A DNA stretch of 64,000 nt from positions 1 through 64,000 of the IMG/VR virus record IMGVR_UViG_3300046787_000200. One strand, given 5' to 3'. Numbering within the stretch: position 1 is the first letter of the stretch; each line of letters opens with the position of its first letter. Position numbers and translations under genes: made by a program. Under the pieces are notes generated by a model. It was given only the letters and a program-made list of their open reading frames with translations, did not search any database and was not told the origin of the DNA. Positions 2,384 to 49,530 of this stretch are shown one piece after another.

Positions 2384-2481
2384 TATTCATCCTAAAATTT
2401 ATTTATTATATTATTTATCAATAAACCCATTTCTTTTCTTAGGAAAAAAACACCCAAGTGATCTTTTTTCTTAAATAGTGT

Positions 2482-2847
2482 ATGCTAACCAGACAACCAA
2501 ATAGACCACTATGTGAGCATTGCAAAACATCACTAGCAAAGCCTAATGGGAAGAGTAAGCACGGCTTTACTAAGTGGCACAAGTATTGTGTTGATTGTGC
2601 TAAAGGTGCATATAATAGTAAGTTTGGTTACTTACTACATAAGAAAGATAAGTGCGAGAAGTGTAGCTTTATACCAGAAGATAAATGTCAACTAGATGTT
2701 GTGTATAAAGACGGTAATAAGAAGAATAAAGACAAGCGCAATCTAAAAACATTATGTGCTAATTGTAATAGATTACATCAAAAGAAATTAAAAGAGAAAC
2801 GTAAATCTATACTAGATATTACGATTGATAGTGACTTTACACTTTAA
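2482..2847 (+). CDS. Zn-finger / degenerate HNH-like protein
   Basis: Four CxxC pairs. LDVVYKDGNKKNKDKRNLKTLCANCNR aligns to the HNH pattern L(E/D)VDHxDGNxxNNxxxNLxxLCxNCH but lacks the His residues. Confidence 0.6.
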   Translation: MLTRQPNRPLCEHCKTSLAKPNGKSKHGFTKWHKYCVDCAKGAYNSKFGYLLHKKDKCEKCSFIPEDKCQLDVVYKDGNKKNKDKRNLKTLCANCNRLHQKKLKEKRKSILDITIDSDFTL

Positions 2848-3221
2848 TAACTTTTTTCTTCAACTATACTAGAGCCAACTAATGTGTTAATATCTTTCTT
2901 AATTTTAGCTCGCAAGTCATTCTTTAGATATACTTGTCTTGCAGTATTGACAAAATCATCACCAAACGTTTGATTCTTTTCACATTCACGCTTATAGTTC
3001 TCAATATGCCAAAGTTCTAAATTGACTTTGTATAATTGACTTTGTAATGGTTCTACACTATCTAAATCTAATTTTAGTTCGTCTTTAAGTTCTTCTAGTG
3101 CTTGAAGTTCTTTTTCGATGTTGGACAACTTAATCTTATCTTTTATAAGATTTGATTTGATTTTTAGAATGGTAATTTTGTCAATCAGTTCACCTACTGA
3201 AATTGGGGCTAAGACTATCAT
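2844..3221 (-). CDS. DUF6165-like protein
   Basis: N-terminus APISVGELIDKITILxIK and C-terminus ARQVYLKNDLRAKIKKDINxLVGSSIVEEKSY match my recollection of the family pattern. Confidence 0.7.
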   Translation of the reverse strand: MIVLAPISVGELIDKITILKIKSNLIKDKIKLSNIEKELQALEELKDELKLDLDSVEPLQSQLYKVNLELWHIENYKRECEKNQTFGDDFVNTARQVYLKNDLRAKIKKDINTLVGSSIVEEKSY

Positions 3222-3253
3222 ACAAATATATAGTCGTTAAATATAATAACCAT

Positions 3254-3278
3254 AAAAAAGAGCACCGAAGTGCTCTTT
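3254..3278 (-). terminator. Rho-independent terminator after the major capsid gene
   Basis: Minus strand AAAGAGCAC-TTCG-GTGCTCTTT followed by a T run: 9-bp stem with a UUCG loop. Confidence 0.9.
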
Positions 3279-3334
3279 GATTCCTTCCCGTAACACAGAC
3301 CGTAGTCTGTGCTCCCGAACAAGAAGATTCCGAT

Positions 3335-4531: not shown

Positions 4532-4561
4532 TTATGTTTCTCCTAATCTATGTCTTTTTAA

Positions 4562-5662: not shown

Positions 5663-5673
5663 GCTGTTTCCCC

Positions 5674-6309
5674 TTATTTAATTTTGAGATCCTTGATGAG
5701 GCGCATTACTTCCTCACGCAAGTATTTCTCTACTTTCTTGTCGCCTCTTGCTTCCTTAGCAATATCCAACATTTTATGACCATGACGCATATTCATCATG
5801 CCTTCATAAATTGCTTTAGGATACGCATTTGGTGCGCTAGGTTGTGCAACAATATCCACAGTGACTATCTCAAAGTCACTCACTTTGCCGTTCAAATCGT
5901 CAACGTTACCGCTGCCACGACTTGATACGCCGAGTTTCACACCACTCTCCAACATAGTCTCAACTAACTTACCCATTGGAGTTGGTAAAATCTTTAATTT
6001 GCCGAAGCCATTAGCCCCATCCATCCACATAGATGTAATCATATGTGATACACGGTCTAAATTAATCTTTAAATCATCTGGGTGATCTACTTCACCTAAT
6101 ACTGAATAGCCTTCTTGGATCTGCTTGTTCAATGTCTCTACTGCATTCTCAATTTCAGAAACAGGGTAAACACGCTCATTAGCGTTCTTTACCCCACCCT
6201 GAATGAAGATGCCTTTCATATAAAGGCTCTTCAATGCACCCTCACCTGAACTCTCAACAACCATGCTAGCACGGTCGAAAGTCAGATGTTCTTTGAGATA
6301 CAAAGCCAT
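5674..6309 (-). CDS. gp21: Prohead protease, gp21-like
   Basis: GEVDHP, GVSSRGSG and DIVAQPSAPNAY motifs, plus NANERVYP. Confidence 0.95.
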   Translation of the reverse strand: MALYLKEHLTFDRASMVVESSGEGALKSLYMKGIFIQGGVKNANERVYPVSEIENAVETLNKQIQEGYSVLGEVDHPDDLKINLDRVSHMITSMWMDGANGFGKLKILPTPMGKLVETMLESGVKLGVSSRGSGNVDDLNGKVSDFEIVTVDIVAQPSAPNAYPKAIYEGMMNMRHGHKMLDIAKEARGDKKVEKYLREEVMRLIKDLKIK

Positions 6310-6323
6310 TTCTCTCAGATTCC

Positions 6324-7112: not shown

Positions 7113-7161
7113 TGTTTGTTTCTCCTAAGTAATGGCTTTGTAGAGTTATTTAGTGACTATC

Positions 7162-7193
7162 AAAAAAAACAGCACAATAAGTGCTGTTTTTTT
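7162..7193. terminator. Bidirectional Rho-independent terminator
   Basis: A8-CAGCAC-AATAA-GTGCTG-T7. Confidence 0.85.
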
Positions 7194-7215
7194 ACGTTTT
7201 TACTAAAACTAATGA

Positions 7216-7440
7216 TTATACAGTAGGTGCGCCTTCTGCTTTTGGTGCATATTGCTGATGAACCTTCTTCAAGTAATTAACTTTTTCATAATTACGAACA
7301 TCATTCATCTTACGCAACTTGCGAATTTGTTTCAATGTAAGTTTAGTTTTGCGACTTTCACGCCATTTAGGTTTGCTATTATCAGCACTTACATCCTGAT
7401 AACCTGCTACCGCCTGATCAAACATTTCAAATAATTTCAT
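7216..7440 (-). CDS. Small basic head-module protein (possible internal head protein)
   Basis: 74 aa, starts MKLFEMF, sits directly after the portal gene and has its own GATAAATA box. Confidence 0.7.
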   Translation of the reverse strand: MKLFEMFDQAVAGYQDVSADNSKPKWRESRKTKLTLKQIRKLRKMNDVRNYEKVNYLKKVHQQYAPKAEGAPTV

Positions 7441-7456
7441 ATAGTTATTTATCTAA

Positions 7457-9250: not shown

Positions 9251-9274
9251 AATGAAGGTCTATTCAGTATTTAG

Positions 9275-12025: not shown

Positions 12026-12095
12026 GTTTTTTACCCACTAAATATTATGTAGTATTTAGTATTGGGCAATTGCCCATTTTTTATCAAGGACAACA

Positions 12096-13660: not shown

Positions 13661-14227
13661 TTAAGTATTGATTGTGAGGATTTTGTTATCTGTAACAGTT
13701 TGATTTGACGTGGTGTCTGTTGATCCTGAATATTTTTTTAGTAATTCACTGTTGTGGTTGAAGAAACTGTCAAATTCTGTAATTATCCAATCTCCGTTTT
13801 TGGGACTAGTATAATATAAGAAATTGTCAGTCACCCATGTTAATTTGCTTTGAACAGCAATATAACGACCCTTACGATTGAATTTCATAAACAGAATATT
13901 ACAATCGCCCGGGTCAGCTACATCCATGAGTTGTGATAACCAAGCATCTATTACTTTGCATTCCCCTGAAAGTAATAAATGAAACGGAAAGTCAGCATAA
14001 AATTTACATTCAACGTTCATTTTAGTAAACGTATGACCAGGAACAATGTCCCCTTTAAAACTTCTTACTTGACCTTCATGCAAGATTTGTGTTCTTGCTT
14101 GATTTTTTCCACCGATATAAGCTCCAGACCCCGGAGCACGAATGAATGACTCACCGTACTTCTCTGAAAGATATTTAGCGATTTCTCGCTCAAAACCGGA
14201 ACCTTTTTGTTTCTGTGGACTTGGCAT
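13661..14227 (-). CDS. Holliday junction resolvase, PD-(D/E)xK type
   Basis: KQKGSGFEREIAKYL...RAPGSGA...GDI...NVECKFY, next to gp46/gp47. Confidence 0.8.
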   Translation of the reverse strand: MPSPQKQKGSGFEREIAKYLSEKYGESFIRAPGSGAYIGGKNQARTQILHEGQVRSFKGDIVPGHTFTKMNVECKFYADFPFHLLLSGECKVIDAWLSQLMDVADPGDCNILFMKFNRKGRYIAVQSKLTWVTDNFLYYTSPKNGDWIITEFDSFFNHNSELLKKYSGSTDTTSNQTVTDNKILTINT

Positions 14228-14260
14228 ACTACTACTTATCGTCTGTAACTCGCTTTAAAA

Positions 14261-17346: not shown

Positions 17347-17352
17347 TGTCCT

Positions 17353-17381
17353 AGTATAACAGTTCTATCTAGTTAATTCAA
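17353..17381 (-). promoter_or_regulatory. Sigma70-type promoter for gp47-gp46
   Basis: Minus strand TTGAAT-17 nt-TATACT; ATG follows 6 nt later. Confidence 0.65.
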
Positions 17382-18025: not shown

Positions 18026-18931
18026 TTATTCCTCATATACTGTACTACTTGAGCCGGAACCTTGTCTAGACCAACTTGGATTCAATCCATTTAATTCTAA
18101 AATATCATCACGTATATTTTGATTGCGTTTTTCGGTATTCAATACACGACAGAAACTATTTGTTATAGCAGCCGTATAATAAGCGAATGGGTTAGCAGAT
18201 TTAGCTTCATTGAAACGTAAGCCAACATAGGTTAACTGCAAGATAGCACTGTTACGCATTTCATCATTATATGTATATCCACGCCAATTATACTTCATAG
18301 CGTATTTTTCGCACATCATAATGTACATACGGGCAAGTTTGTTAGTAACTTGTCCGTGATCTTTACTGAATTCACCGGTCTCTAAATCACCTTTCCAATG
18401 ACTTTTACCTATGCATTGAAATGTATTAGTTTCATCTAATTTATAATGTTGGAATGGTGGGAAATTAACTTTGACATGGACCATGTCATCTACTTCAGCT
18501 TTGGTTGTAGTATCTTCTAAATCAGCAAAAATCTCATCTGGATCTGGTTCCTCGAACTCAAATATATCTTTTGCTGTTTTCTTTTTAACTGTTTTGCGGG
18601 GTTGTTTTGGTGCAACTGGAACATGATCCCAAGTCATTACACGAAATACCAAATCTTTAATATCTATTGAATCTGGACTAACTGCATCTTTACTGCCTTG
18701 TTCTAAACTAAGACGTAATGCTCTAGTTTCTTTTGCTTGTTGTATTGTTTCTGGTTTATATGCATAAGCTAAACTTTCTTCAATACTAGCTTGCGGCATA
18801 TCTACAATGAAATCGTAGCGATGAAATTCTGGTTTAGTAAAGTAGCAATATGCGTTTTTGCTTTCATGTATCTCTTTTAAAATGTCTTTATTATTTAAAT
18901 AGTTGACAGGTTTGCGTGATGGTAGGCTCAT
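18026..18931 (-). CDS. gp55: Late-transcription sigma factor, gp55-like
   Basis: VNYLNNKDIL start, NWRGYTYNDEM, FNEAKSANPFAYYTAAITNSFCR. Confidence 0.85.
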   Translation of the reverse strand: MSLPSRKPVNYLNNKDILKEIHESKNAYCYFTKPEFHRYDFIVDMPQASIEESLAYAYKPETIQQAKETRALRLSLEQGSKDAVSPDSIDIKDLVFRVMTWDHVPVAPKQPRKTVKKKTAKDIFEFEEPDPDEIFADLEDTTTKAEVDDMVHVKVNFPPFQHYKLDETNTFQCIGKSHWKGDLETGEFSKDHGQVTNKLARMYIMMCEKYAMKYNWRGYTYNDEMRNSAILQLTYVGLRFNEAKSANPFAYYTAAITNSFCRVLNTEKRNQNIRDDILELNGLNPSWSRQGSGSSSTVYEE

Positions 18932-26300: not shown

Positions 26301-26571
26301 AAATGATCCTAAGATACCTGCACCAAACTATAGTGGAAACCCCGCAACAACGGGTGAAACTGCTGGTACAGAAGCTCTTAGTAAGAAGATTGCTGAACAG
26401 AGAGAATTAACTGAAAAGGTGTTTGCTAAAGTTGCAGAAGTCAGAGAAGCTAGATTAGCATTTACTAAAGCAAAAAATGAACTTCCTGCAGGTGATCCTC
26501 AAATTAATGAATTGAGAAATAAATGGCTTGCACTATCAGATGAGTTAGCCGCCCTAGAAACAGTAGCATAA
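23365..26571 (+). CDS. gp5: Central spike, gp5/VgrG-like, with a long C-terminal extension
   Basis: OB-fold GVVKDNIDPIRSGRLRVY...PPDVGTTVICLFVNGD, then GHSIVMDDG and beta-helix repeats ending GSKINLN. Confidence 0.8.
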   Translation: MANNIFKPRGATSANKLGAGGAVVSPVPVFGVVKDNIDPIRSGRLRVYVSDMGGTDPDDSNSWVTVNYMTPFYGSTEATGDKTGYGTYKQNPISYGMWTSPPDVGTTVICLFVNGDPNYGYWIGCVPQPEALYMVPANGSSETAVLNQNEANSYGGAKKLPVTNINTNNDKINNSALFFNEPKPVNSYLAGVLAQQGLIRDTIRGTIGTSAQRESPSRVGWGVNTPGRPIYEGGFTDETIADAATGQGEQGNLKITSRRVGHSIVMDDGDLLGRDQLIRLRSSLGHQILMSDDGQTLFIIHANGQSYIELGKEGTIDMYSTNSVNIRTQGDLNLHADNNINMHAKKDFNFYGENINLNSDKKTNFRIGTDYNIQSLGKYTLKVGSGMSLASSGEASFASSAVTFVNGSKINLNTGSASLVPQEVKPLTTVAHTDTLHDKAKGWAAAPGTLLSITTRAPAHSPWSNANQGVDVKVDNSASANFPSAPSPAVAATNASVPGTPTAPVAPSVASTVPVTGAVSKAIGPNATNALVGAAATAAQVGPAAAAVKAGAGIVQTAGGAVPAIGKMAQTPQQMEAAGVLKPGSAVLINSLVSSGKTIEQAMTQNLFTGKPGAENVAKYINNPTAQVQTQVANYQQAQTQLTQAGVITGNEADGQIAGLVNATASVGLTTTVNYLKTASGGVSGAVTQGGKAINQMLGDVTSTISSGNYAANMGAVVTGGLSSIATSLSGIKKGIGVGISGLLDSAKGVAGSAFYAITRGFPTLKAGEPQNLKQIAEKAIADVQSSGTVPSSVADVANAAAINSGINADAIASGAASSAINGSTSINTAITTGVGTVTNIVSATENAASAVSATLPASASSGLSGLPGAQNAVATVVKGVPTVLPGAGNITSAITQVTSSISTGILSGTASTLINKLKVPGASLLGLANTGLSPALSAKLTSAISSLSSGGSVPVILPVVGEGTNNRTDLAKNFTDALNDPKIPAPNYSGNPATTGETAGTEALSKKIAEQRELTEKVFAKVAEVREARLAFTKAKNELPAGDPQINELRNKWLALSDELAALETVA

Positions 26572-26590
26572 ATATTATATAGGATAAAAC

Positions 26591-27040: not shown

Positions 27041-27088
27041 CAAAAACCATGGTTTTCATTTAAGATAAATACTTAAAAGAGAATAACT

Positions 27089-30000: not shown

Positions 30001-30460
30001 ACCTACTATTAGTGAATTACAACAAGCATATGGTCAATTAGATGACTATAAGATGTTAACTGATAGTATTGTGCCTAATAGTGTTCGCTTTGTTCCGTTA
30101 TTTGGAACTAAAGCACCAACACAATTGCAAGGTACGATTAAAGTAATTAAATCACAAAACACAAATGCAAGTGATAGCGAAATACGTAGTGCAGTGTTAT
30201 CTGCAATGAATAGTTATTTCAATATTAACAATTGGAGTTTTGGTGATACATTCTATTTCTCTGAACTAAGCGCATACTTACACGCCCAGTTAGGAGATTT
30301 AGTAAGTTCAGTTGTTCTTGTACCTAATGATCCAACAATGAGTTTCGGTGATTTGTATGAAATCAAATCAGCTCCATACGAAATTTTTGTTAACGGTGCA
30401 ACTGCAAATGATGTGGTGGTAATTGCTGCCCTTACACCAGTGCAATTACAAATAAGATAA
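27089..30460 (+). CDS. gp6: Baseplate wedge subunit, gp6-like
   Basis: DFKSYDYETLRKSFIDYL, ENFIDTAERRDSVIKLA, ETLANIKLRAPARYYTQNRMVNGEDY. Confidence 0.85.
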   Translation: MATSSRQSAIFGVQNWQQIYQTFREADFKSYDYETLRKSFIDYLRTYYPETFNDYIESSEFIALLDVMAFMGQGLAFRNDLNTRENFIDTAERRDSVIKLANLVSYNPKRNIAGQGYLKITNISTTENLTDINGINLSNQTILWNDPANANWLEQFNTIINATLINSQRVGRPGNTQEILGVKTDEYSVNIPPTSLPIVPFTSTVDTINMNFELVSATSLDEDYVYEIPPAPSGKMNMMYRNDKLGYGSPNTGFFFYFKQGTLQSYDFNLAQQISNQVVDIDIQGVNNTDTWLYQLNTSNGGRTLWRLVDSVYANASLQTESSYKKVFSVVSRFNDQVSYTFGDGVFSEAPVGTFRAYVRAGNALTYTIDPTEMQGIQVTIQYISRAGRTEALTIGLSLQTPASTAQARETLANIKLRAPARYYTQNRMVNGEDYTNFPYTLYSSIIKSAAINRSSIGVSKNLDLLDPTGKYSSTNSFASDGGLYQNTDDGNLLLTISNTGDIIKFLTDSLALALADNRAKQYYLQNYPRYNINIASGDGTVYWNTSTVDANSITGYFYNIVGSTNTPISTGTYNTHNMKYVTKGALVRVDAPSGAYFDENNRLVYGIAGASNITYYWTTVLSVIGDGYNNGEGNFSNGAGPVSLNGYVPQGAIITQVIPAFQNTLPTSVLTEARIKMELNQSFSLIFDNSLLISQDRWSVAAYNATGWFVNFNSVGSNRYEVTYKSLRYYFGSVADTRFWFETGKLVYDPVTGKILSDYVKILPSNTQPGSNNALAKPVQISIIGQTVESDGYVNDFEVEVASIDVNNNEIVTDPDFFQTVTGYVTGGNNTGIYTFFELIEDAINLSRYQLIATSSVVYQYPTLTNIEVVKYEYPLGQLFYAYSENKFYTTVQDTSVTTPYYLVVEQTQYYMQPGRQALSYQYRHNSNNTTRIDPATTNIIDLYLVTQAYYTAYQNWIQDTTGTIPMPDTPTISELQQAYGQLDDYKMLTDSIVPNSVRFVPLFGTKAPTQLQGTIKVIKSQNTNASDSEIRSAVLSAMNSYFNINNWSFGDTFYFSELSAYLHAQLGDLVSSVVLVPNDPTMSFGDLYEIKSAPYEIFVNGATANDVVVIAALTPVQLQIR

Positions 30461-30486
30461 GTACTATATAATAATAGAGAGTTATA

Positions 30487-42400: not shown

Positions 42401-45400
42401 ATATTACAGGAAATATTGGAGCTGCCGGTGTAATATGTTATACAGGTGAAGTTGTCAACACTGCAGTTGTAACAATCGCATATCCTGGCATATTAGATAT
42501 AACTGCTACTGAGCGAACATCTAACTTTATAACAACACCGTTGTTACCAAGTGGTACTGCAGGAACTCAAGGTTTCTATGTTGATTTACCAGTATACTTT
42601 GTTGGCGATGTGTTTGGCGGTATCATTGAAAATGATACGTACTATATCACTACAATCATAGATAATGAAACATTTACTATATCTAAAACACAAGATCCAA
42701 TTATTTTAGACGTTACTGCTACTACCGGATCTACTGATACTGTAACAGTTTCTTCAACAATTGAATTAAATGTAAATGATCCTATTGTATTCACTGGAAC
42801 TACATTTGGTGATATAGTTGCCGGACAAGTTTATTACATTAGAAGTGTTGAAACCGGCACATCAATTACGATTGCCGAAGTATTGAACGGTGGTGCAGTC
42901 AACTTATCAAATGGTTCAGGTTCTTGTACATTAACTAACCAGAAAGATGTTGTTCAATTGACAACTGCTACTGGCTCTATGACAATGAACGTTGGCTTGC
43001 CAGTAAGTCCAGGACAAGTAACTGGACAGCAATTCACATTCTATAACACTGATGTGTCTATCGCTACTGGTGTGACTGGAACAAATGGCAATTTAGTTAC
43101 AAGAACAACTGTTGCTTCTACAAGCAATGGTGATTATTTGTTCTTAGATTATTTCAGTGGTGGATTGAAAAACATTTACAATAACTTACCATTTGAAGTG
43201 TCAGCTACAATAGGTGGACTATCAACCGGTACAACATATTATGTTGAATCAAATGGTGTATTGGCAGTAAATGTTTCTGGGTCAAGTTCTTCAACTAACG
43301 AATACACATTAGCATCTGGATCTGATACTACTGGCTTCTATATTGAAATGCCAGTCTCATTCAGCGGTGGCGTATTTGGTGGTGTGCAGGCCTTAGTAAC
43401 ATACTATATCAATAGCTATACATTAGGTGGTGATCAATTTACTATTACTGACGTATTAGGTGGAGTATTAGTTGATGACGTTGTACCAGGTGACTCATAC
43501 ACAATTTATGATTTAGGTACAACTACTCAATTAGAATGGAACACTATTGCAGGAACCAGTGCTATTGTTTATGTAGCAGGTGATAGAATCACTGCAGCCG
43601 CTACTGGTACTGGTACTGGTAGAGTATCTGCTGACTTTGTATTGACAAATGATGCAGGATCAATGACTATAACTGCTGATAATCCATATATTACTATTAA
43701 AGATGGTAGCGGAACATCAGTGACATTGACAGATGATGTAGCTGAAGTTACTGTAACACAAACTCCATTATCAGTACCAACATTCAATGTTGGGTATGTC
43801 TTAGGTGGATACACCGTTGAGATAGATGATATAGGTGAAGGTTATACATTCGACAACACGATTACTATTTCAGGAACTGATTTGGGTGGTACAAGCCCAG
43901 CAAATGATTTAGTACTAACTGTAGACGGTATCGATGTAATCATTCCAAATCCTAACACTACGTATGATTTCTTATTACCAGTGTCGTCAGATGGAACAAT
44001 TACAAGCTTTATATCTTCTGGTAATCCTGCAGATGTAGTGAACAACTATTACTTGAAAGTAATATCTGCGACAGAATGTGAAGTTTATTCTGATCCATTA
44101 ATGCAGATTCCCGTAAGTGGTATCGACTTCCCGTATGTTGCAGAAGATTATGCATTCTTACCAGAGCCATTCTACTTTGACCAATCGATTGTTAAGTATA
44201 ACAATCAAATATGGCAGTGTATTATTAGTAATAATGATAGCGAATTTATATTAGGTAAATGGGAACTATTAGACAGTGGTAGTAGAAAACTTAACGAGTT
44301 AGATCGTATTGTTGGCTATTACACACCAACAGTTAACATGCCAGGTGTAGATTTAACTCAACTAGTTACAGGTATTACATATCCAAATGGAACATATTTA
44401 GGTAATGCATTTGCACCTGAAGATCAATACACTTTAGACACTGATTTACAAGATCAACCGTTCTATCCAACTGAAGTAGATACTGTTTCTATTGTTTATG
44501 ATGGTTCACAATATGTAGCCGTTTCAAACACACCAGAATATTCTGCAACATTATTGAGTGCAGATACTGCCGAGTGGACAATTAACAAATTTGTTAATAT
44601 CCCAATACAAGCATCTGATATTGTGTATGCTGACGATAAATTTGTAATTGTGTGCGAAGATGCAACTACACCAATCTATACAAGTGATGACGGTATAACA
44701 TTCACTACAACAGGTGGTGCAACTGGATCACTAATAGTTGAATCAACATCGTTATCTAGCGTTGCACATAACGGCAGTGTTTGGGTAGCAGTTGGTGAAA
44801 ACATTGTGTCATCCGCTGATGCTATAACTTGGACAGAAACTGACTCATTTACGAATGGTCTTACTAATAACTTAAATGGTATTGCATATTCTAATTTGTC
44901 TAGCTATACAGGGTTTGTTGTAGTAGGTACAGGTCAAGAATTGATATCAGGTAATAATCAAACAGTAAGTGTTATCAAATTAAGTACTGATGGAAACACA
45001 TGGACAACATTACCAATCGTTTCTTATAACGGATTTAATGCTGTAACAATTGGTAATTCTAAATTATTAGCAGTAGGAGAAGACGGAGTAATCTACACTT
45101 CATTGAACGGTACTAATTGGGCAGGTGTAAATGAATCTAATGTTATCAGTGTAAATGCAAGCACCAATGTTATTAACGTAGGTAGCACAACTGGATTTGC
45201 AGTAAATGATATTGTTAGATTTACTACGTCATTTGATGTTGTTTCATCTTCAACAACGTATTATATTGTAGCTATCGTATCAACTACACAAGTACAAGTA
45301 AGTACAACGTTAGGTGGTTCAGCAATTACATTAACTGGTGTAAACCCAACGTCATTGACGTTCATGTATGAATATCCATCTGGTCAAAACTTGAATGATG

Positions 45401-48400
45401 TATTATATGCTAATTCATTGTTTGTAACAGTAGGTAACAGTGGTACTATTAAAACTAGTACTGACGGTTACACATGGACAACTGAAACATCAGGTACTAC
45501 TGAGAATCTAAATGGTATCACATACAATAGTGATTCAAGTGAATGGGTAGTAGTAGGTGATAACAACACTATTATTTCTAGTGCTGATGGAAGTACATGG
45601 ACAAGTTCATCATTGTTTGCACCCGAACCAACTGTATATAATGTACAGGGTGATCCATTCATGTCAGGTTATGGTCCTGAAGAATTAGTACCAGGTGTAG
45701 TAACTGATAATCTATCAATGATTGTTACAACACGTCCTGGAACAGATTGGGATGTTTCTATATACGGACATGCAGGTTTCAATGTAGTTTCTACTGAAGC
45801 AACTATGACTTCAACATCTATATCATTTGCAGGTATAGTAGAAAATCCTGCAAGTATGTCATTATTTGATGTAACTCCAACTACAAATACAAGTGTAAGA
45901 ATTTATGATTATACAGTAGATTGGGTAAACAAAGTAATCACATTAGATACTGCATTAGCAGTAGGTCATAAATTGCGTTTTGACTTGTATGAAGTAGGTA
46001 ACGGAGACCAATTAATTAAGTCAAACTCACAAGTTATCCCGTTCATTGACAATGAAACTACTGGTTTTGTTGAGATGCCATTGAATTGCAATTACTCTGC
46101 TAGCAGATTTAACGGTTCAGGCATTATAAGACCTAACACTGATCCTAAGCAAGTTACTGCTATTGAAACAGATGCGTTAGATAATGGTATCGTATGCGAT
46201 TCAGTATCATATTTTACAGTTAATGCACCTATAACATTCCAAGGTTCTGTATTTGGTGGTATAACTTCTGGTACTACTTATTGGGTAAAAACAGTAAGTA
46301 CTATTACTAACAAGATAACAATATCTGCTTCTGTCTCAGGTGGTATCGCTGGTCCAACTGTAGAATTAACATCTGATACAGGTACAATGTTAGTTAACAT
46401 CCAATCAACTAATGGTTTAGTTTGGACTGACCCGGTTGTAATACACAACGGCACACGCTTAGTTTTAGGTGAACAGGGTATTGTTTCAGAAACAATAAGT
46501 GGAACAAATACAATCATAGTTAATACTACAGACCATTATGATGTAGGCGACACTCTAGTATTCAGTGATGCTATTGAAACTGGCACGTTCATTGGTTGTG
46601 GATTGTCTGCACAAACAACGTATTACATTACATCATTGACAGGTACATCATTTACAGTATCTACTACATTAGGTGGTTCTAACGTTTCATTGAATGATGC
46701 AACTGGTATAGCATTATGCGTAACTAATGATTATGCAATAACAATTGCTGATGTAGGAACTTCTGCGAAAATGGTATTTGCAAATCAATATGATCAAGCT
46801 AATGATTTTGTTGTATTATCTATATTTGGTGAGACTGCACCGGAGCAATATGGATACACATTGCCTGAAGTAGAAGTATTCAATCTTACTTCAGGTTTAA
46901 CAGAATTCACATTGACTAATTACGTAGGTGGAACCAATGCAACTAATGCTATCGTTGAATATAATGGATTACGTCTAGTTGATATTTCAAACTATACGAT
47001 TGACTTCAACACAGCAACATTAAGTTTGAACTTTGGAACAACTGCAGGTGATACTGTCGCTGTAACCAGCTATAACTTAACAGATAGACAATATTTGCAT
47101 ACAACATACGGTGGTTCGTTCTCAGGTTCAAGCACTAATTCATTTACAATTAGTGATACTACACATGAGCCAGGGTATGATGCTGTTTTAACCGCAGGTG
47201 CATTCGTTGTAGGTACTGAATATGTTATTGAAACAATAGGAACTACTGACTTTACGTTGATTGGAGCTTCAAGTAATACAGTAGGTGTGGTGTTTACTGC
47301 AACTGGTGTAGGTTCAGGAACTGGAACTGCGGCAGTTGGTTGGGGCGAAACATACTCACCGGGCCCAGATTACCTAACATTAAGTGCGGGTAGCACAACT
47401 TCATTGAATATCAATGATGCCATAACATTTAGTGGAACAACATTTGGTGGAATTGTTGCTAACCAAACATATTATGTAGTAACTATTATAAGTGCAACTG
47501 AATTTGCAGTATCAGAAACACCCGGCGGAACAGCAGTTACTTTAACTACAGCTTCTGGCTCATTCTCTGGTATTACTAATCCTCCTACAGTAGCTCCAAT
47601 AACAGGAATTGATAATGAGATTATTGCACCAACTAATATAGGTGTTACTGATGTTGATTCAGTTGGTAATGTTATAACATGTACATCAACTACTGGTTTT
47701 AGTGCAGGACAACCAGTCATGTTTAAGAGTGCTACTCCTAACACACCGTTTGGTAATGTACTATGTGACGGCACAGTATACTATATTTCTAACCCAGTTG
47801 TTAGTGCTACTGAGTTCACTATATCAGAAACATCAGGTGGACCAGAGTTTGATCCAGGTACTGCTAGTGGGGCAATTGTAGCAGAAGTAGGTGGAAACCC
47901 AACAGTAACAATTACTACCGGCGTAGCACATAATTTAGTTGAAAATGATATTGTTAGAATTGACGGGACTATCGGTTCAACTCAATTGAACAACAATACA
48001 TATTATGCTAAGATTATCAATGCAACACAAATTGCATTGTATAATAGCGAGTATGACCCAACAGTTAATGCAGTTAACGATCCAGTAACAGTGGTATCTA
48101 ACTGGATTAGCGGTGGTTATGTATGGTTAGATAAGACATTCACGTTGATTACTGCGGTTGCAACAAACACAACCGCACCTAACTTAATTACAGTACCGGA
48201 CACGGGAGAATTTGTAATAGGAACTCCAATTATATTCACTGGTACTGACTTATTAGGTGGAATAGTTTCTGAAGTTACTGCAGGTAGCTTTGTCGCAGGA
48301 CGCACATATCAAATCAATAGCACAGGAACTACTGACTTCACACTAATCGGTGCATTGAATAACAATGCAGGAACTACATTTGTGGCTACAGATGTTGGAA

Positions 48401-49362
48401 CAGGAACCGGCACTGCAACTGCTATATATTATGTTTATGATATTGAATCTGCTACTGAGTTCAGAGTTACTGCAGTACGTGACGGTGACCCATACACTGT
48501 AACAACTGATTCAGGCTTTATGAACGTTACTCAGTGGGAACAATCTAATGTAGACCGTTTATGGGTAACGGTCAACGGGTATCGTGTACCATCAAGTGCG
48601 TTGAGATTAAATTTTGACAATAATTTGAGTATATTGACAACTGTTGAGGCAGGCGATGTGGTTATCATTACAAGTATGATACCAACAGCTACTCCTAACC
48701 AAGAAGTTTATATTCAGAATGTTAATAAGTCAAATACACAATCTGTATATAGAGCTAATACTTTGACTAGAACTTGGTTAACTCAACCATTAGAAAATGT
48801 AGATAATACAATTTATTTGGAAGATGTAACTAGAGTAACTGAAAATGTTGTTCAAACTGAAATAGCACCTGCAGTGGTAAATGATACTATGAGTATCGGG
48901 TTGTTTGGTGACAAGCGTATTATTACGCAAGTTATTGTATACAACAACGACACAAGTACAACTATTGACCCAACAGAATATAGTGTTGTTTTAGAAGATT
49001 TGGCTCCAATACTAGTAATAAATATTGATCCAGATAGTCCTGCAATTACTGCAGGAGATGAGTTAACAATTACTGTTATTTTGGGTAATTTAATATATGT
49101 TAATGGTGAGCAGATACGTTTCACTACAGTAGATTTTGACGCAAATACGTTGTCAGGATTACAGCGTGGGGCTAACGGTACCGGCGAGCAAGTTTATATC
49201 CCTGCATATACTACAGTATATGGCATATTGTCAGGTAATCAGTTACCTGCAGTGTATAACGGGGTAAGTTGGAATTCGTTTAATTATAATTTAGTAGATG
49301 GTGATCCACTACAAATTAGTACAACTTATAGTGCTAATTTCTTAAATGCGGATGTTCCCTGA
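30487..49362 (+). CDS. Giant (6291 aa) modular baseplate/fibre protein in the gp7 position
   Basis: Uninterrupted ORF after gp6; FG-GAP-like and Asp-box propeller repeats; more than a dozen copies of a ~50-aa beta module. Confidence 0.75.
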   Translation: MAARIRTLNFLPEVFQTPTNAQFLGATLDQIVDQPNTMKIEGYVGSKFGYGINAKDKYVVEPTKTRTNYQLDPGVVFTKTNTSTAQDFISYPGIIDALKLEGGITNNNDRLFNSQFYSWDPFVNLDKIINFNQYYWLPTGAPVVNISTDIVYTATDYVVESLPNGYNISSDINPAGATNPTLTLIRGGTYTFAVNQTSDFWIQGKPGVTGFDPQQTNLQTRDVLGVENNGTNAGIVVFSVPYKDAQDEYNLPGNNLVDVVSTLQFSQINGLRLSEIGGGIDGVSSLNGLTLMFYNGLTDEVANFGAYDLQTFDQTDVTPVSFDDDSLIYQPVSSWFFQINYIDNPEDATDPIIQLVPYQNIPTSQKITATYGTQWKARNFYRTPSGVINLVPYLSAILDTLYYQDGTSPNKVGIIKLIESNSTNQLDINDILGQTQYTSPNGVVFTNGLKVSFSGDIYPASYTEGEYYVEGVGTAIELINTADLIAPEPFTEGTYTPYDSLPYDIGNFDSTLYIPVQQDYITIARNSIDKNAWARSNRWFHIDVINATATYNNNPSIATTYATQDNKAKRPIIEFYPNLRLFNNGVVGKDPIDFFDDRTTDAFTYVAGQQQYWPDVEVYTAYTGTIAAATGTSTTITIDADDVTGTFQVGQYISDTTNVLPRNTQITSISGTTTLTITVTWDDSTTITATSNASLVANDVSNDNYSLYDGARIVFSADTNENVRNKIYVVRFSNIAGGTNTVITLTEAVDGLVLPLEEIFAFKGYNNQGKDFYFDGIEWLLAQQKTTVNQAPLFDIFDNDGVSFADTDVYVGSSFAGNKLFSYGIGSGIKDIVLGFPLRYSAVNNVGDISFDVPLNSATFNYVRGTTPITQNVNTGYVYNYTSGTDVVRQLGWQTAVAESRQYQIFSFDYIATDLTTTYTCDIAAATDTVWPNIQVYVNNEIQPSTSYTYTIGANSTVITFTVPDPLVDTIVEVSILSDQVSSTAYYQVPINLSNNPFNEDVTVVNVGDIRGQYQSIFYNNPNTTGNVFGSNNYRDLGNLVPWGNKIIQNSASLALPGSLLRLQNHNLFSSIQYNSQQYITFKSLLINTIDSTEYNIMQTPAVILDDALDQITANKTTTEPFFWSDMLPNKAAYATNTYTFANSLDVSIYPLTRIYNFDTANYYGVLVYLTRTVDNFTSTSQLIVNQDYTVSTDSPSLTITKDLLPGDIVTIKEYTQTFGSYVPNTPTKLGLYPSFIPEVVLDSNYSQPTYFIVGHDGSYTKLYGDYIDGHLVDFRDQALLEFETRIYNNLKLTDTVPISEFDVIPGFFRTTDYTYDEVLEIYSQYFLNWVGQNRIEYKKQFYQANNEFTYNYTQSGNRLNNQPFEQGFWRGIYEYFYDTSTPNTTPWEMLGFSDQPTWWTNRYGPAPYTSDNLVLWGDLAQGINWNNGDPVVLPNCVREGLLDVIPVDSQGDLLSPFDAVMGNYNQKTFRNDWVVGDVGPAEFSYRRSSSYPYDLMQILALTKPAQFYNLGFDVDNYKYNAEFNQYLVNNRSHLVISDVAIYGNGTAKTSYVNWIVDYEKQVGVDATTNITDLFDNLDVRLIYRLAGFSDKSLLNFFVEKGTPNSRNASLLIPDESYSVLLYDNVPLTTIIYSSVVVQSTSTGWKVFGNSQDTAYFTVSVPKINGNYNRVNVGDLSVQLAKDYVTDSTALIPYGTEFPDLQGVSQFIASYGHYLSTQGVLFEQIESGIDVNWNQMVTELLYWAQSGWETGSIINLNPAANLITINKDSYVVQPLTLQRQNFILNQNLYPIQSVDLAVIRDSTLFSAKPLNEGDTVAYGQFNISNFEHGIVFDNVTLFNDTLYNLVTGLRQNRILTRGTKSADWNGTVDAQGFILNQDNIQEWSPNVKYTRGNIVKYKNKYWFALKVLNAQVTFDEQYWKETDYNEIQKGLLPNSSTRSYESTLFYDTNKSNLDQDSDLLSWSLIGYRPRDYLALADLTDITQVNVYKNLIKEKGTRIAANAFKGLTLPQGGIDYDIYENWAIKTGEFGGVLNDNFVDFRLNQNLLTSNPSIVGLTNGIDTDGVQQGVPLYSVFNYGRPISNPDVLPTLPVDTPNKLFPNAGYVNFNDVKISSYYYNGLNTAVTPLSNLYVNEYVWLADYNNTWQVYTPTSAGQVISAINNLNGTVTIQFNGPHNLTKYQPFAIVNFNENIDGYRIVATIVDTTKVTIALSLPGSITTITGQGVALKFSSQRIATPSDVNTLPLLDSEFVKNKVWVDTNNDGSWAVYRKSLNYVYTDELLKDGSTTYGSAVAQTSNLGYLVTDADAGVAYRYAYSPVFDNYSIVQTITKDASFGTTIEYVDDVFVISQPTGASYTDRKVYIYELVINTLVNELQEVQVITAPNTVTNWGSSIALSGDKNWLYISAYEQNLVYAYRKSVLTGEYEFVETITDAVLSSGDNFGYSIATNYYGNNVVISAPNQDSTVTDFGYAYAYDRLVQTFEAPYNSLPYAPQTFSLIFTPTTTTVSVTDTDATNDRFTCTDSSVLTIGDPIVFTGTTVFGGVALNTVYYVLTKPTGTTFTVSTTRSGSVLQLQTASGTMTGNQQTEPLFVSVNGTLIDDNEYGVVGSLLNVYASLTAGDIVTVSGSEFILTQTFQSSSTNAYEIGTNFGYSLDVDTYANEILIGAPFEINAQNQEGAVYRYTNSGGSYGLITGTTAGNVTSATTILLNGYAVIIPTGNATVVANAINNANITNVIASATDGILTIQVISVDLAFANDKLSLSVLDIDVLTQLGVSIYTETQVINDPHSQGRTQFGSTIKFNSSGSFVVSAPVSARYAETTFDASDDENYDNDTLFDNNTTQFIDSFVNAGAVYMYDYLPVYNETVSNSGVYVYAQSVNALNEDYGSQPYYGTALDFNNNSVMIGTPNFRPGIDNGQVIIYNNATGETDWSVYRNSAPIVNTDAIQNVQLYSVSTNNTLVNLDYIDPLQGKILGAVRENLDIVSNVDPANYNSPTATNTGSTVWGPAQVGKLWFNTSTTRFVNYHQSNDVVYNSQWWGRVFPGSDVKVYSWVTSDVPPISYQGPGTPYDIEEYVEQYSLNSTGSLVPVYYYWVRNTNIVFTKTGKTLSDTICESYIATPLATGIQYMAAIQPNVFGLYNSGSDINATDTALHIGFSTGTSDDVSHSVYSLIRSNYADDFLPGLPGIGDTIVPESLYNRMIESFSGVDQTGAVVPDPFLPKPVQSGILVRPRQSFFYNRYKALENYLKFANEVFLQYPLAETNSLKFLFTEGAINPSTVDNPNWPGLPQRFYNTQDYWELVNWWATGYSDSTKSAMLVESYYDLATINAQVGLIVTVNRNGEGLQETYVFDGTEWVRIGLQNGTIQFKSSLWDYSTARIGFGDNFFDTTPYDTFPSEETRYIIRALNEELPSELLLYRNEALILMFQYIVSETIESQNYLPWLNKTSFIDVAHTIRELLPLEVFQSDNQDFLAGYLNEAKPYHVVIKDFLFKYTGTDVYDGEITDFDLPAQYNTQYQQYITPELVYSNPSSINQYLPTDPIWQTQPYVNWFNNQGLSITGVNNYPITVLSSYVALNSNSMVVDNVYGFPTTGVVTIGTEQIAYSSVDRAYSTISGLTRGVNGTAITNHIPGEQIIIDLPPVLLLNGGRGYAEPPKVTAYIDTSIYPAPRRAAILQPVMNLDTILRIDVVDPGDGYQVLPEIRIEPSEVITFASTDVDTLTNTITLQTQFIQTGDLIKYYVGSNTTPIGGLDNEQYYYVSVLENTPFFVIALYTNYADALQDHDRVVLTSVGSGTNNNIAVSARASCVSTSIPIRENQITLRFDRTTYSSDITEWTPNRFYGSFYAGLFNNSTRIASSSITLESTQPPIESILASAQGATFEIQGVTNDQVLTWSSLTRTVGSTTASTNVITLSYNSSEPNASGSTIGFYVDMPVKFTGALSGTGLVDGTTYYIIEVINESDFKVSATVNGSAVDITGNIGAAGVICYTGEVVNTAVVTIAYPGILDITATERTSNFITTPLLPSGTAGTQGFYVDLPVYFVGDVFGGIIENDTYYITTIIDNETFTISKTQDPIILDVTATTGSTDTVTVSSTIELNVNDPIVFTGTTFGDIVAGQVYYIRSVETGTSITIAEVLNGGAVNLSNGSGSCTLTNQKDVVQLTTATGSMTMNVGLPVSPGQVTGQQFTFYNTDVSIATGVTGTNGNLVTRTTVASTSNGDYLFLDYFSGGLKNIYNNLPFEVSATIGGLSTGTTYYVESNGVLAVNVSGSSSSTNEYTLASGSDTTGFYIEMPVSFSGGVFGGVQALVTYYINSYTLGGDQFTITDVLGGVLVDDVVPGDSYTIYDLGTTTQLEWNTIAGTSAIVYVAGDRITAAATGTGTGRVSADFVLTNDAGSMTITADNPYITIKDGSGTSVTLTDDVAEVTVTQTPLSVPTFNVGYVLGGYTVEIDDIGEGYTFDNTITISGTDLGGTSPANDLVLTVDGIDVIIPNPNTTYDFLLPVSSDGTITSFISSGNPADVVNNYYLKVISATECEVYSDPLMQIPVSGIDFPYVAEDYAFLPEPFYFDQSIVKYNNQIWQCIISNNDSEFILGKWELLDSGSRKLNELDRIVGYYTPTVNMPGVDLTQLVTGITYPNGTYLGNAFAPEDQYTLDTDLQDQPFYPTEVDTVSIVYDGSQYVAVSNTPEYSATLLSADTAEWTINKFVNIPIQASDIVYADDKFVIVCEDATTPIYTSDDGITFTTTGGATGSLIVESTSLSSVAHNGSVWVAVGENIVSSADAITWTETDSFTNGLTNNLNGIAYSNLSSYTGFVVVGTGQELISGNNQTVSVIKLSTDGNTWTTLPIVSYNGFNAVTIGNSKLLAVGEDGVIYTSLNGTNWAGVNESNVISVNASTNVINVGSTTGFAVNDIVRFTTSFDVVSSSTTYYIVAIVSTTQVQVSTTLGGSAITLTGVNPTSLTFMYEYPSGQNLNDVLYANSLFVTVGNSGTIKTSTDGYTWTTETSGTTENLNGITYNSDSSEWVVVGDNNTIISSADGSTWTSSSLFAPEPTVYNVQGDPFMSGYGPEELVPGVVTDNLSMIVTTRPGTDWDVSIYGHAGFNVVSTEATMTSTSISFAGIVENPASMSLFDVTPTTNTSVRIYDYTVDWVNKVITLDTALAVGHKLRFDLYEVGNGDQLIKSNSQVIPFIDNETTGFVEMPLNCNYSASRFNGSGIIRPNTDPKQVTAIETDALDNGIVCDSVSYFTVNAPITFQGSVFGGITSGTTYWVKTVSTITNKITISASVSGGIAGPTVELTSDTGTMLVNIQSTNGLVWTDPVVIHNGTRLVLGEQGIVSETISGTNTIIVNTTDHYDVGDTLVFSDAIETGTFIGCGLSAQTTYYITSLTGTSFTVSTTLGGSNVSLNDATGIALCVTNDYAITIADVGTSAKMVFANQYDQANDFVVLSIFGETAPEQYGYTLPEVEVFNLTSGLTEFTLTNYVGGTNATNAIVEYNGLRLVDISNYTIDFNTATLSLNFGTTAGDTVAVTSYNLTDRQYLHTTYGGSFSGSSTNSFTISDTTHEPGYDAVLTAGAFVVGTEYVIETIGTTDFTLIGASSNTVGVVFTATGVGSGTGTAAVGWGETYSPGPDYLTLSAGSTTSLNINDAITFSGTTFGGIVANQTYYVVTIISATEFAVSETPGGTAVTLTTASGSFSGITNPPTVAPITGIDNEIIAPTNIGVTDVDSVGNVITCTSTTGFSAGQPVMFKSATPNTPFGNVLCDGTVYYISNPVVSATEFTISETSGGPEFDPGTASGAIVAEVGGNPTVTITTGVAHNLVENDIVRIDGTIGSTQLNNNTYYAKIINATQIALYNSEYDPTVNAVNDPVTVVSNWISGGYVWLDKTFTLITAVATNTTAPNLITVPDTGEFVIGTPIIFTGTDLLGGIVSEVTAGSFVAGRTYQINSTGTTDFTLIGALNNNAGTTFVATDVGTGTGTATAIYYVYDIESATEFRVTAVRDGDPYTVTTDSGFMNVTQWEQSNVDRLWVTVNGYRVPSSALRLNFDNNLSILTTVEAGDVVIITSMIPTATPNQEVYIQNVNKSNTQSVYRANTLTRTWLTQPLENVDNTIYLEDVTRVTENVVQTEIAPAVVNDTMSIGLFGDKRIITQVIVYNNDTSTTIDPTEYSVVLEDLAPILVINIDPDSPAITAGDELTITVILGNLIYVNGEQIRFTTVDFDANTLSGLQRGANGTGEQVYIPAYTTVYGILSGNQLPAVYNGVSWNSFNYNLVDGDPLQISTTYSANFLNADVP

Positions 49363-49377
49363 AAGATAAATAAGTAA

Positions 49378-49530
49378 ATGAATAATATACAAGAAACCAA
49401 AGAAAATTTGTCAGATTCTAAAGGTGAAGTTAAACCTAATGAATCTGGCGGATTTTACTTTTCATCTTTTTTAAAAATAACAGATCCAAATACCAAAGAA
49501 GTATTGGTTCAAACACGGGGCGATAACTAA
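49378..49530 (+). CDS. 50-aa protein missed by the ORF track
   Basis: Hand translation gives MNNIQETKENLSDSKGEVKPNESGGFYFSSFLKITDPNTKEVLVQTRGDN. It has a GATAAATA box 5 nt upstream and a TAATG overlap with the next gene. Confidence 0.8.
   Translation: MNNIQETKENLSDSKGEVKPNESGGFYFSSFLKITDPNTKEVLVQTRGDN

What the first reader, a model, noticed from the sequence alone, without database searches (positions are those of the whole stretch)
2471..49380. Late promoter boxes placed 5 nt before ATG suggest a set of leaderless late mRNAs
Seen: GATAAATA-N5-ATG at the 74-aa head gene (box 7446-7453) and the 50-aa ORF (49365-49372); GATAAGTA-N5-ATG at the resolvase (14233-14240); CTATATA-N5-ATG at the DUF6165-like gene (3227-3233); TTAAATA-N4-ATG at the HNH-like gene (2471-2477). 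None has room for a Shine-Dalgarno sequence between box and ATG. Established, from memory: the T4 late box TATAAATA spans about -13 to -6, which would put +1 on the A of ATG. Major structural genes instead have long leaders with AGGA/GGAG. Inference: the phage uses two translation modes to set protein stoichiometry, and the host translates leaderless mRNA efficiently.
Basis: partly seen in the sequence, partly recalled or inferred. Interest (0 to 1): 0.65.

Follow-up and report, generated by a model that had tools for sequence, protein, structure and literature searches.

The report
Leaderless late genes of jumbo phage
In this uncultured 352-kb T4-related phage, about thirty late genes carry the late-promoter box so close to the ATG that transcription should start on the ATG itself, giving mRNAs with no leader and no ribosome-binding site; its environmental relatives share this layout, but T4 and the four cultured phages tested do not.

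Summary
All five sites exist as described; three lie on the minus strand. The window is the first 64 kb of a 352,012-bp IMG/VR jumbo phage, a distant relative of the RaK2/PA5oct group, and it encodes a gp55-type late sigma factor.

Genome-wide, ATAAATA-N4-6-ATG occurs 37 times against 7-9 expected, and 31 of these open ORFs of at least 40 codons. Spacings of 7-14 nt are almost empty. A second group at 15-29 nt carries a Shine-Dalgarno (SD) sequence, and that SD never begins less than 5 nt after the box. This fits T4 geometry (box at -13 to -6), which puts +1 on the A of the ATG.

Starts at 4-6 nt are ATG only and have no SD above background. Eleven of them head divergent transcription units, and two sit 3 nt after a terminator. 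Orthologues in hundreds of environmental relatives keep the box and the spacing, or switch cleanly to a box-SD-ATG form. T4, CBB, PA5oct and a Vibrio phage show no such peak.

Leaderless late mRNAs are therefore well supported by sequence and comparison, but no transcription start site (TSS) data could be obtained. The "long leaders" are in fact about 10-24 nt. I rate this a new variant of known kinds.

The parts
7446..7453 (-). Consensus late box GATAAATA, 5 nt before ATG 7440-7438. Predicted +1 is the A of the ATG.
   Evidence: The box with N4-7 is conserved before the orthologous gene in about 60 of 80 related loci. About 14 loci have box-N6-AGGAAA-N6-ATG/GTG instead.
7216..7440 (-). 74-aa gene directly after the portal gene; predicted first, leaderless cistron of the head-gene operon.
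   Evidence: Homologous and syntenic to PA5oct EST35_0150, which is annotated as a virion protein found by MS, and to CBB_253. The N-terminus MKLFE is conserved from residue 1. An in-frame stop lies 15 nt upstream and there is no alternative start.
49365..49372 (+). Consensus late box GATAAATA, 5 nt before ATG 49378 and 3 nt after the stop of the 6291-aa gene.
   Evidence: ATAAATA-N4-6-ATG is kept in nearly all of 80 loci. This includes forms where an upstream in-frame ATG overlaps the box (ATG-ATAAATA-N5-ATG).
49378..49530 (+). 50-aa gene, predicted leaderless first cistron. Its 3' end carries the SD for the next, highly conserved 206-aa gene.
   Evidence: The C-terminal motif KPNExGGFYFSS..DPNT..RGDN is conserved across 80 loci. 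No Pfam family was found.
14233..14240 (-). Variant late box GATAAGTA, 5 nt before ATG 14227-14225 of the PDDEXK/endonuclease VII-position resolvase gene (13661-14227).
   Evidence: ATAAGTA-N5-ATG (N4 in one) is conserved in 19 of 30 relatives while the flanks diverge. The variant is enriched 4.1-fold at N4-6 genome-wide.
3227..3233 (-). Weak box-like CTATATA (two mismatches), 5 nt before ATG 3221-3219 of the DUF6165 gene (2844-3221).
   Evidence: Relatives: L013 has ACTATATA-N5-ATG, L090 has ATAAGTA-N5-ATG, and L022 has an SD instead.
3254..3278 (-). Intrinsic terminator after the major capsid gene (AAAGAGCAC-TTCG-GTGCTC-TTTTTT on the minus strand), 32 nt before the DUF6165 ATG.
   Evidence: Read directly. 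It leaves only 32 nt, with no SD, for any promoter serving the DUF6165 gene.
2471..2477 (+). Variant box TTAAATA, 4 nt before ATG 2482 of a 121-aa HNH-like ORF (2482-2847) that lies opposite to both neighbours.
   Evidence: The variant is enriched 3-fold at N4-6. There is no Pfam hit and no comparative support, so this assignment is uncertain.
18026..18931 (-). Gene for the gp55-type late sigma factor (301 aa), the protein expected to read the boxes.
   Evidence: phrog_12791 'sigma factor for late transcription', E 2e-73. phrog_234 'late sigma transcription factor', E 9e-22. 36% identity to CBB_244, E 5e-56.
27065..27071 (+). Leadered-class box (GATAAATA, 17 nt before the ATG) of the 1123-aa baseplate wedge gene (27089-30460).
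   Evidence: The orthologues are also leadered, at 17-20 nt.
26568..26574 (+). Leadered-class box (CATAAATA, 16 nt before the ATG, SD AGGA starting 6 nt after the box) of the 149-aa gp25-like baseplate gene.
50152..50158 (+). Leadered-class box (GATAAATA, 25 nt before the ATG, SD GGAG) of the 409-aa virion protein gene (50184-51413).
2400..2418 (-). Two leadered-class boxes (16 and 28 nt before the ATG, SD AGGA) before the 743-aa tail-fibre-like gene (152-2383).
30457..30463 (+). Variant box GATAAGTA, 23 nt before the ATG of the 6291-aa gene.

Best explanation
The boxes are T4-type late promoters, read by host RNA polymerase carrying the phage's gp55-like sigma factor. In T4 the 8-bp box occupies -13 to -6, so transcription starts on the sixth base after it.

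In this phage and its environmental clade the late promoters come in two discrete layouts.
1. Box-N5(+/-1)-ATG. Here +1 is the A of the ATG, and the mRNA has no 5' leader and no Shine-Dalgarno sequence. It must be translated by the leaderless route, in which a ribosome binds a 5'-terminal AUG.
2. Box-N5-SD-N6-8-ATG. Here the transcript starts at or just before the SD, and the leader is only about 10-24 nt.

There are about 31 consensus cases of the first kind in the genome, close to half of all start-proximal consensus boxes, plus perhaps ten or more with one-mismatch boxes. Two consensus cases lie in the window. The leaderless gene is often the first cistron of a late operon whose later cistrons have ordinary SDs. 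One such operon runs from the 74-aa gene through the protease gene to the capsid gene; another runs from the 50-aa gene into the 206-aa gene.

Shown: the motif, its spacing statistics, the lack of an SD, ATG-only starts, conservation and switching among relatives, and the presence of a gp55 homologue. Inferred: that the box is an active promoter, the exact start site, and the mode of translation.
For: 1. Spacing. There is a sharp peak at 4-6 nt (37 observed against 7-9 expected), a gap at 7-14 and a second hump at 15-29. The same bimodal pattern appears in two complete relatives, a 116-kb fragment and 80 loci.
2. Geometry. PMC2988020 numbers the first T of TATAAATA as -13 and notes an AT-rich segment after the box. 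Here -4 to -1 is AT-rich and -5 favours C in both classes, and nothing upstream is conserved.
3. Internal calibration of +1. In the leadered class the SD 4-mer never starts 0-4 nt after the box. Its onset at 5 nt is sharp: 0 of 22 in this genome and 1 of 86 pooled fall below 5.
4. No SD. SD-like words at -18 to -5 occur in 4 of 31 leaderless-class genes, which equals the random rate of 12.5%. The rate is 22 of 35 in the leadered class. There is no excess of internal SD-led starts.
5. Start codons. All starts at 4-6 nt are ATG, with no GTG or TTG in this genome or in 80 loci. GTG appears only in leadered orthologues.
6. Context. Eleven of 31 head divergent transcription units and two lie 3 nt after canonical terminators.
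7. Conservation. The leaderless state is kept in 12 of 16 (G004) and 11 of 18 (G003) orthologues with a resolved N-terminus. Switches go only to the box-SD form (Fisher P 0.002 and 9e-5).
8. The ATGs are real starts. For the 74-aa gene, relatives place an SD in front of the same ATG, and homologues are annotated virion proteins. The terminase N-terminus aligns with CBB_275.
9. A gp55 homologue is encoded. Box-bearing genes are baseplate, tail-fibre-like, virion and terminase genes.
10. The first 35 nt are less folded than in other genes (P = 0.009).
Against: - There are no transcription start or ribosome data.
- T4 geometry is assumed to hold for a gp55 homologue that is only distantly related. 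Spacings of 4, 6 and 7 nt require flexible start-site choice or would leave 1-2 nt leaders.
- About half of the leaderless-class genes sit 3-28 nt after a same-strand gene. These could also be translated from read-through transcripts.
- gp33 and gp45 homologues were not demonstrated. The Pfam search for the clamp was uninformative, and the CBB authors found neither.
- The host is unknown. If it is a proteobacterium, as the tmRNA suggests, efficient leaderless translation would be unusual.
Confidence: 0.72

Rival explanations
1. The boxes are real late promoters, but they mainly serve the downstream cistrons. The adjacent ATG gene is translated mostly from longer read-through transcripts by termination-reinitiation or SD-independent initiation. 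Leaderless translation would then be a minor by-product of packing a promoter into a very short intergenic gap.
For: About half of the leaderless-class genes lie 3-28 nt after a same-strand gene, and some boxes overlap the upstream stop codon. Both window cases are small first cistrons followed by SD-bearing genes.
Against: Eleven of 31 head divergent units and two follow terminators, where no upstream cistron exists. The ATG-only rule, the exact spacing and its conservation are not needed for coupling. Large essential genes such as the terminase are in the class.
Confidence: 0.15
2. ATAAATA at -12 to -6 acts here as an A/U-rich translation signal, for example an S1-type enhancer or a site favoured by ribosomes carrying the phage bS21. 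It would replace the SD on ordinary leadered transcripts rather than act as a promoter at these sites.
For: The word ends 4-6 nt before the ATG, exactly where SD words end. The phage encodes a bS21 homologue.
Against: The same box, with the same flanks, sits 15-29 nt upstream with a normal SD in between. Orthologues switch between the two forms while keeping the box. A +/-1 nt spacing, a strict 7-mer and the 5-nt exclusion zone for SDs fit a promoter and not a loose A/U enhancer. bS21 is also present in PA5oct and a Vibrio phage that lack the peak.
Confidence: 0.08
3. The pattern is a compositional or gene-calling artefact of an AT-rich genome.
For: The genome is 36.6% G+C. The box contains TAA, which tends to close upstream frames.
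Against: The count is 37 against 8.7 +/- 3 in Markov simulations and 8 for the reversed pattern. The analysis did not depend on gene calls. AT-rich T4 and the cultured relatives show no excess. The pattern is conserved across diverged relatives.
Confidence: 0.01

Closest known systems
T4 late transcription (gp55 sigma, TATAAATA box at -13 to -6)
   Same: The core motif (ATAAATA) is the same. There is no -35 element, the segment after the box is AT-rich, a gp55 homologue is encoded, and the boxes sit in front of virion and packaging genes.
   Different: Position -13 is mostly G or T here. T4 shows no excess of ATAAATA-N4-6-ATG (2 against a control of 2), so T4 late mRNAs are leadered. gp33 and gp45 homologues were not shown here.
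Predicted ATAAATA late promoters of RaK2-like jumbo phages (CBB, GAP32; PMC5259590)
   Same: The phage supergroup is the same (major capsid protein 64% identical). The gp55-like gene has the same gene neighbours. The ATAAATA motif is reported at 35 sites before structural genes.
   Different: CBB orthologues of the window's leaderless-class genes have ordinary SD leaders. CBB, PA5oct and Vibrio phage 2.275.O show no peak at 4-6 nt. The searched papers do not mention leaderless transcripts for this group.
-10 element adjacent to the ORF in Deinococcus-Thermus and other leaderless-rich lineages (PMC12340547, PMC4007540)
   Same: The logic is the same: a -10-type element a few bp before the start codon, no SD, and transcription starting on the start codon.
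   Different: Those are cellular housekeeping promoters in lineages adapted to leaderless translation. Here a phage-specific sigma system does this for a subset of late genes, in a genome that otherwise uses strong SDs.
Single leaderless phage mRNAs such as lambda cI from PRM (from my own knowledge, not checked here)
   Same: A phage mRNA that begins with AUG and is translated without an SD.
   Different: Those are isolated regulatory genes with sigma70 promoters. Here there are about thirty late genes, including the terminase and virion proteins. TSS maps of jumbo phages phiKZ and AR9 report no leaderless transcripts.

Membership tests
T4-type (gp55-dependent) late promoter | The phage encodes a gp55-family late sigma factor. 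| tested here: met
   Window 18026-18931 (-): phrog_12791 E 2e-73 and phrog_234 E 9e-22; 36% identity to CBB_244.
T4-type (gp55-dependent) late promoter | An 8-bp TATAAATA-like box is the only conserved element, with no -35 motif. | tested here: met
   The aligned sites show the invariant core ATAAATA, position -13 as G or T more often than A or C, and nothing conserved from -22 to -14. The core is the most enriched non-SD word near starts.
T4-type (gp55-dependent) late promoter | The segment between the box and the start site is AT-rich. | tested here: met
   Positions -4 to -1 are mostly A or T in both classes, and C is favoured at -5. The property is described in PMC2988020.
T4-type (gp55-dependent) late promoter | Transcription starts about 6 nt after the box. 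| tested here: inconclusive
   The evidence is indirect only. SDs never begin less than 5 nt after the box, and box-to-ATG spacings of 7-14 nt are empty. There are no 5'-end data.
T4-type (gp55-dependent) late promoter | The boxes precede late (virion, packaging) genes. | tested here: met
   Box-bearing genes include baseplate wedge, gp25-like, tail-fibre-like, virion structural and large terminase genes. Many others have unknown function.
T4-type (gp55-dependent) late promoter | A gp33 co-activator and a gp45 sliding clamp are present. | not tested
   The Pfam PF02916 search matched nothing, including in the control genomes, so it is uninformative. gp33 was not searched. The CBB authors found neither in CBB.
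Leaderless mRNA | The primary 5' end lies at the A of the start codon, or within a few nt of it. | not testable with these tools
The 5' end is inferred from promoter geometry only.
Leaderless mRNA | There is no Shine-Dalgarno sequence before the start. | tested here: met
   4 of 31 have an SD-like 4-mer at -18 to -5, equal to the random rate of 12.5%. The rate is 22 of 35 in the leadered class.
Leaderless mRNA | The start codon is AUG, because 5'-terminal GUG and UUG are poorly used. | tested here: met
   No GTG or TTG occurs at spacings 4-6 in this genome, G003, G004, G006 or the 80 loci. GTG occurs only in leadered orthologues.
Leaderless mRNA | The annotated ATG is the real translation start. 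| tested here: met
   Most have an in-frame stop within 3-30 nt upstream and no alternative start. For the 74-aa gene, relatives place an SD before the same ATG. The terminase N-terminus aligns with that of CBB. Internal SD-led starts are not enriched.

The most novel reading that the evidence does not exclude
Late in infection this phage clade may deliberately shift part of its protein synthesis to SD-independent initiation on 5'-terminal AUGs. It might do so with help from phage-made translation components (it encodes bS21, 34 tRNAs and a tmRNA). Under this reading, leaderless late mRNAs escape competition with, or shut-off of, SD-dependent host and early phage messages. It would be a programmed, sigma-factor-coupled switch of translation mode in a phage of an SD-using host.
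Probability: 0.12. Interest if true: 0.85.

Novelty: new variant of a known kind. Interest (0 to 1): 0.66.

Why it matters
T4-type late promoters and leaderless mRNAs are each well known. I found no report that joins them, and the jumbo phages with mapped start sites have none.

If the prediction holds, a very large uncultured aquatic phage clade (at least 598 IMG/VR contigs) expresses dozens of late genes, including the large terminase and virion proteins, without any ribosome-binding site.

The clade also offers natural switches between the leaderless form and the SD-led form of the same gene. That is a ready-made comparison for asking what leaderless initiation costs or buys during infection.

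There are practical consequences too. Gene callers that rely on an SD will misplace or miss these starts. One example is the spurious 'MINKYM' N-terminal extension of the 50-aa gene. Late promoters in such genomes can be predicted to the nucleotide.

Tried and rejected
- Host identification from bacterial assemblies. The portal matched only mis-binned contigs in MAGs of many phyla, which is not informative. The protein atlas placed the phage bS21 only among viral clusters.
- Phage-encoded factors that might favour leaderless initiation. No IF3 or S1 domain was found.
- bS21 as a factor linked to the layout. bS21 is present, but it also occurs in PA5oct and Vibrio phage 2.275.O, which lack the peak, so it does not track the layout. 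I rejected it as an explanation.
- The Pfam clamp family PF02916 matched nothing anywhere, so the result is uninformative.
- Hidden downstream SD-led starts in the leaderless class are not enriched (4 of 31 against 3 of 35).
- A motif shared upstream of two distant boxes (GATTTATTGTCAACC) is absent from the window and was not pursued.
- Pfam on the 6291-aa protein gave only a marginal FG-GAP repeat.
- My simple ORF-based gene caller found 393 genes and misses small ones. The key tests were therefore made independent of it.

Full report
**What the window is.** The window is bases 1-64,000 of a 352,012-bp IMG/VR virus record (36.6% G+C, rated complete by CheckV). Its major capsid protein is 63-67% identical to those of Vibrio phage 2.275.O, Pseudomonas phage PA5oct and the RaK2-like phages CBB and GAP32. 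Gene order around the head module matches CBB. The window carries head, baseplate and tail genes, a T4-type portal, and a 301-aa homologue of the gp55-type late sigma factor at 18026-18931 (-).

**The observation.** Three are on the minus strand. Two are perfect GATAAATA-N5-ATG sites (the 74-aa and 50-aa genes). One is a one-mismatch box, GATAAGTA-N5-ATG (resolvase). One is TTAAATA-N4-ATG (the HNH-like ORF). One is two mismatches from the consensus, CTATATA-N5-ATG (DUF6165).

**Genome-wide test.**
- Of 111 ATAAATA words on both strands, 10, 19 and 8 are followed by ATG after 4, 5 and 6 nt. Thirty-one of these 37 open ORFs of at least 40 codons.
- The background at spacings 40-100 is 2.3 per position (Poisson P about 1e-15). 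Third-order Markov genomes give 8.7 +/- 3, and the reversed pattern gives 8.
- Spacings 7-14 are almost empty. A second hump lies at 15-29 nt.
- A scan of all 7-mers that end 4-6 nt before ORF-opening ATGs returns SD variants and ATAAATA (31 observed, 1.4 expected). The only other leading words are overlapping windows on the box.
- Single-mismatch variants are enriched more weakly: CTAAATA 5.6-fold, ATAAGTA 4.1-fold, TTAAATA and GTAAATA 3-fold.

**Why this points to a promoter with +1 on the ATG.**
- The T4 late-transcription review (PMC2988020) describes an 8-bp box about one helical turn upstream of the start, with an AT-rich segment after it. It numbers the first T as -13, so the box spans -13 to -6 and five bases separate it from +1.
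- Both classes here share the same box flanks: C favoured at -5, A/T-rich at -4 to -1, and nothing conserved upstream.
- The leadered class gives an internal calibration. SD 4-mers begin 5-10 nt after the box and never 0-4 nt after it (0 of 22 in this genome, 1 of 86 pooled unique sites). An SD plus spacer would physically fit at box-to-ATG distances of 10-14 nt, yet none occurs there.
- The simplest reading is that the first five bases after the box are not transcribed. That is the same five bases that separate the box from the ATG in the other class.

**Properties of the 4-6 nt class.**
- SD-like words occur at the random rate (4 of 31, against 22 of 35 in the leadered class).
- Most have an in-frame stop just upstream and no alternative start.
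- Hidden downstream SD-led starts are not enriched.
- All starts are ATG. No GTG or TTG occurs at these spacings in this genome, in three larger relatives or in 80 loci.
- Eleven of 31 are the first gene after a strand switch. Two sit 3 nt after canonical terminators.
- Their first 35 nt are less folded than those of other genes (P = 0.009).
- Codon 2 is never GCN (0 of 31, against 14 of 35 in the leadered class; P = 3e-5).
- Members include the large terminase, two virion structural proteins and a radical SAM protein. Most have unknown function.
- The terminase N-terminus aligns with that of CBB.

**Comparative evidence.** The portal found at least 598 related IMG/VR contigs.
- The 74-aa gene. 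About 60 of the 80 fetched loci keep (G/A)ATAAATA-N4-7-ATG although the flanks and spacers differ. About 14 instead have GATAAATA-N6-AGGAAA-N6-ATG or GTG. One of these has a portal 96% identical to ours.
- The 50-aa gene keeps ATAAATA-N4-6-ATG in nearly all of 80 loci.
- The resolvase keeps the G variant, ATAAGTA-N5-ATG (N4 in one), in 19 of 30 loci.
- Two complete relatives (G003, G004) and one fragment (G006) show the same bimodal histograms.
- The orthologue state is largely conserved. The leaderless state is kept in 12 of 16 and 11 of 18 orthologues with a resolved N-terminus. The leadered state is kept in 11 of 22 and 15 of 20. Switches occur in both directions, but the spacing is never intermediate.
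- T4, CBB, PA5oct and Vibrio phage 2.275.O show no excess, with 2, 3, 12 and 2 hits against controls of 2, 5, 9 and 2. CBB orthologues have normal SDs.

**Interpretation.** The best explanation is a set of about 30 or more leaderless late mRNAs made from gp55-type promoters fused to start codons. They sit alongside a class with very short SD-bearing leaders. In the window, the two consensus cases are small first cistrons of late operons. The operon led by the 74-aa gene contains the head genes, and its homologue in PA5oct is annotated as a virion protein found by MS. Later cistrons have SDs.

The 'long leaders' are not correct. Stoichiometric design and host efficiency are untested. The ease of switching between the two forms in near-identical relatives argues against a rigid design.

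**Limits.** The host is unknown. gp33 and gp45 homologues were not shown. Related loci are not independent samples.

**Literature.**
- The ATAAATA motif was predicted as a late promoter in CBB and GAP32, without mention of leaderless transcripts.
- PA5oct work reports only sigma70-like promoters.
- phiKZ and AR9 TSS maps report no leaderless phage transcripts.
- No paper in the library combines the T4 box with leaderless mRNAs.
- The closest cellular analogue is the -10 element adjacent to ORFs in Deinococcus-Thermus.

Noticed in passing
G000:C1:251000-251215 (+), outside the window (locus L139:1486-1701): The phage encodes a ribosomal protein bS21 homologue (Pfam PF01165, 58 bits). The gene is also present in four large clade relatives, in PA5oct and in Vibrio phage 2.275.O, but not in CBB or T4. 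It therefore does not track the leaderless layout.
   Followed up: partly
G000:C1:83288-83786 (locus L146): A permuted two-piece tmRNA (tag ANDSQFALAA; Rfam beta_tmRNA 106 bits, tmRNA_permuted 113 bits) is followed directly by a tRNA with anticodon CTA, which reads TAG. The betaproteobacterial tmRNA type is a lead to the host.
   Followed up: partly
G000:C1:97496-99553: TAG is a rare stop (9 of 393 called genes). One gene ends in a TAG formed by the late box plus one base (TATAAATAG). It is followed in frame by the 329-aa radical SAM gene of the leaderless class. With the phage's TAG-reading tRNA, read-through fusion is conceivable.
   Followed up: no
G000:C1:300450-315120 (-): An array of 34 tRNA genes lies on the minus strand. 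Several consensus boxes with N4-5-ATG face outward from, or sit between, these tRNA genes (313552, 315134, 304546).
   Followed up: no
window 30487-49362 (+): A single 6291-aa ORF, preceded by a GATAAGTA box 23 nt before its ATG. Pfam gives only a marginal FG-GAP repeat hit, so its function is unknown.
   Followed up: partly
window 12038-12059: Two divergent CTAAATA boxes overlap in a near-palindrome between the 916-aa gene (-) and the T4_baseplate-family gene (+). This looks like a compact bidirectional late promoter.
   Followed up: no
whole genome, codon 2 of box-proximal genes: The second codon is GCN (Ala) in 14 of 35 leadered-class genes and in 0 of 31 leaderless-class genes, where AAA and AAT dominate (Fisher P = 3e-5). 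The cause is unknown; it could reflect promoter opening or escape, or leaderless initiation.
   Followed up: partly
G000:C1 near 116986 (-) and 308251 (+): The same 15-16-nt word (GATTTATTGTCAACC) lies about 7-10 nt upstream of two distant consensus boxes. It is absent from the window.
   Followed up: partly
window 2482-2847 (+): A 121-aa ORF with a Cys/His-rich HNH-like N-terminus lies in the opposite orientation between a tail-fibre-like gene and the DUF6165 gene. This is the typical position of a homing endonuclease insertion. No Pfam family reached threshold.
   Followed up: no
loci L122-L138 (genome contigs): Portal-bearing contigs of this phage group are binned into MAGs labelled as at least eight different phyla or classes. 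Such bins should not be read as host assignments.
   Followed up: no
loci L155-L189 and others (upstream of the 206-aa gene): In many relatives an in-frame ATG overlaps the box (ATG-ATAAATA-N5-ATG). Longest-ORF calling then adds a spurious 'MINK(Y/E)M' extension to the 50-aa protein.
   Followed up: yes
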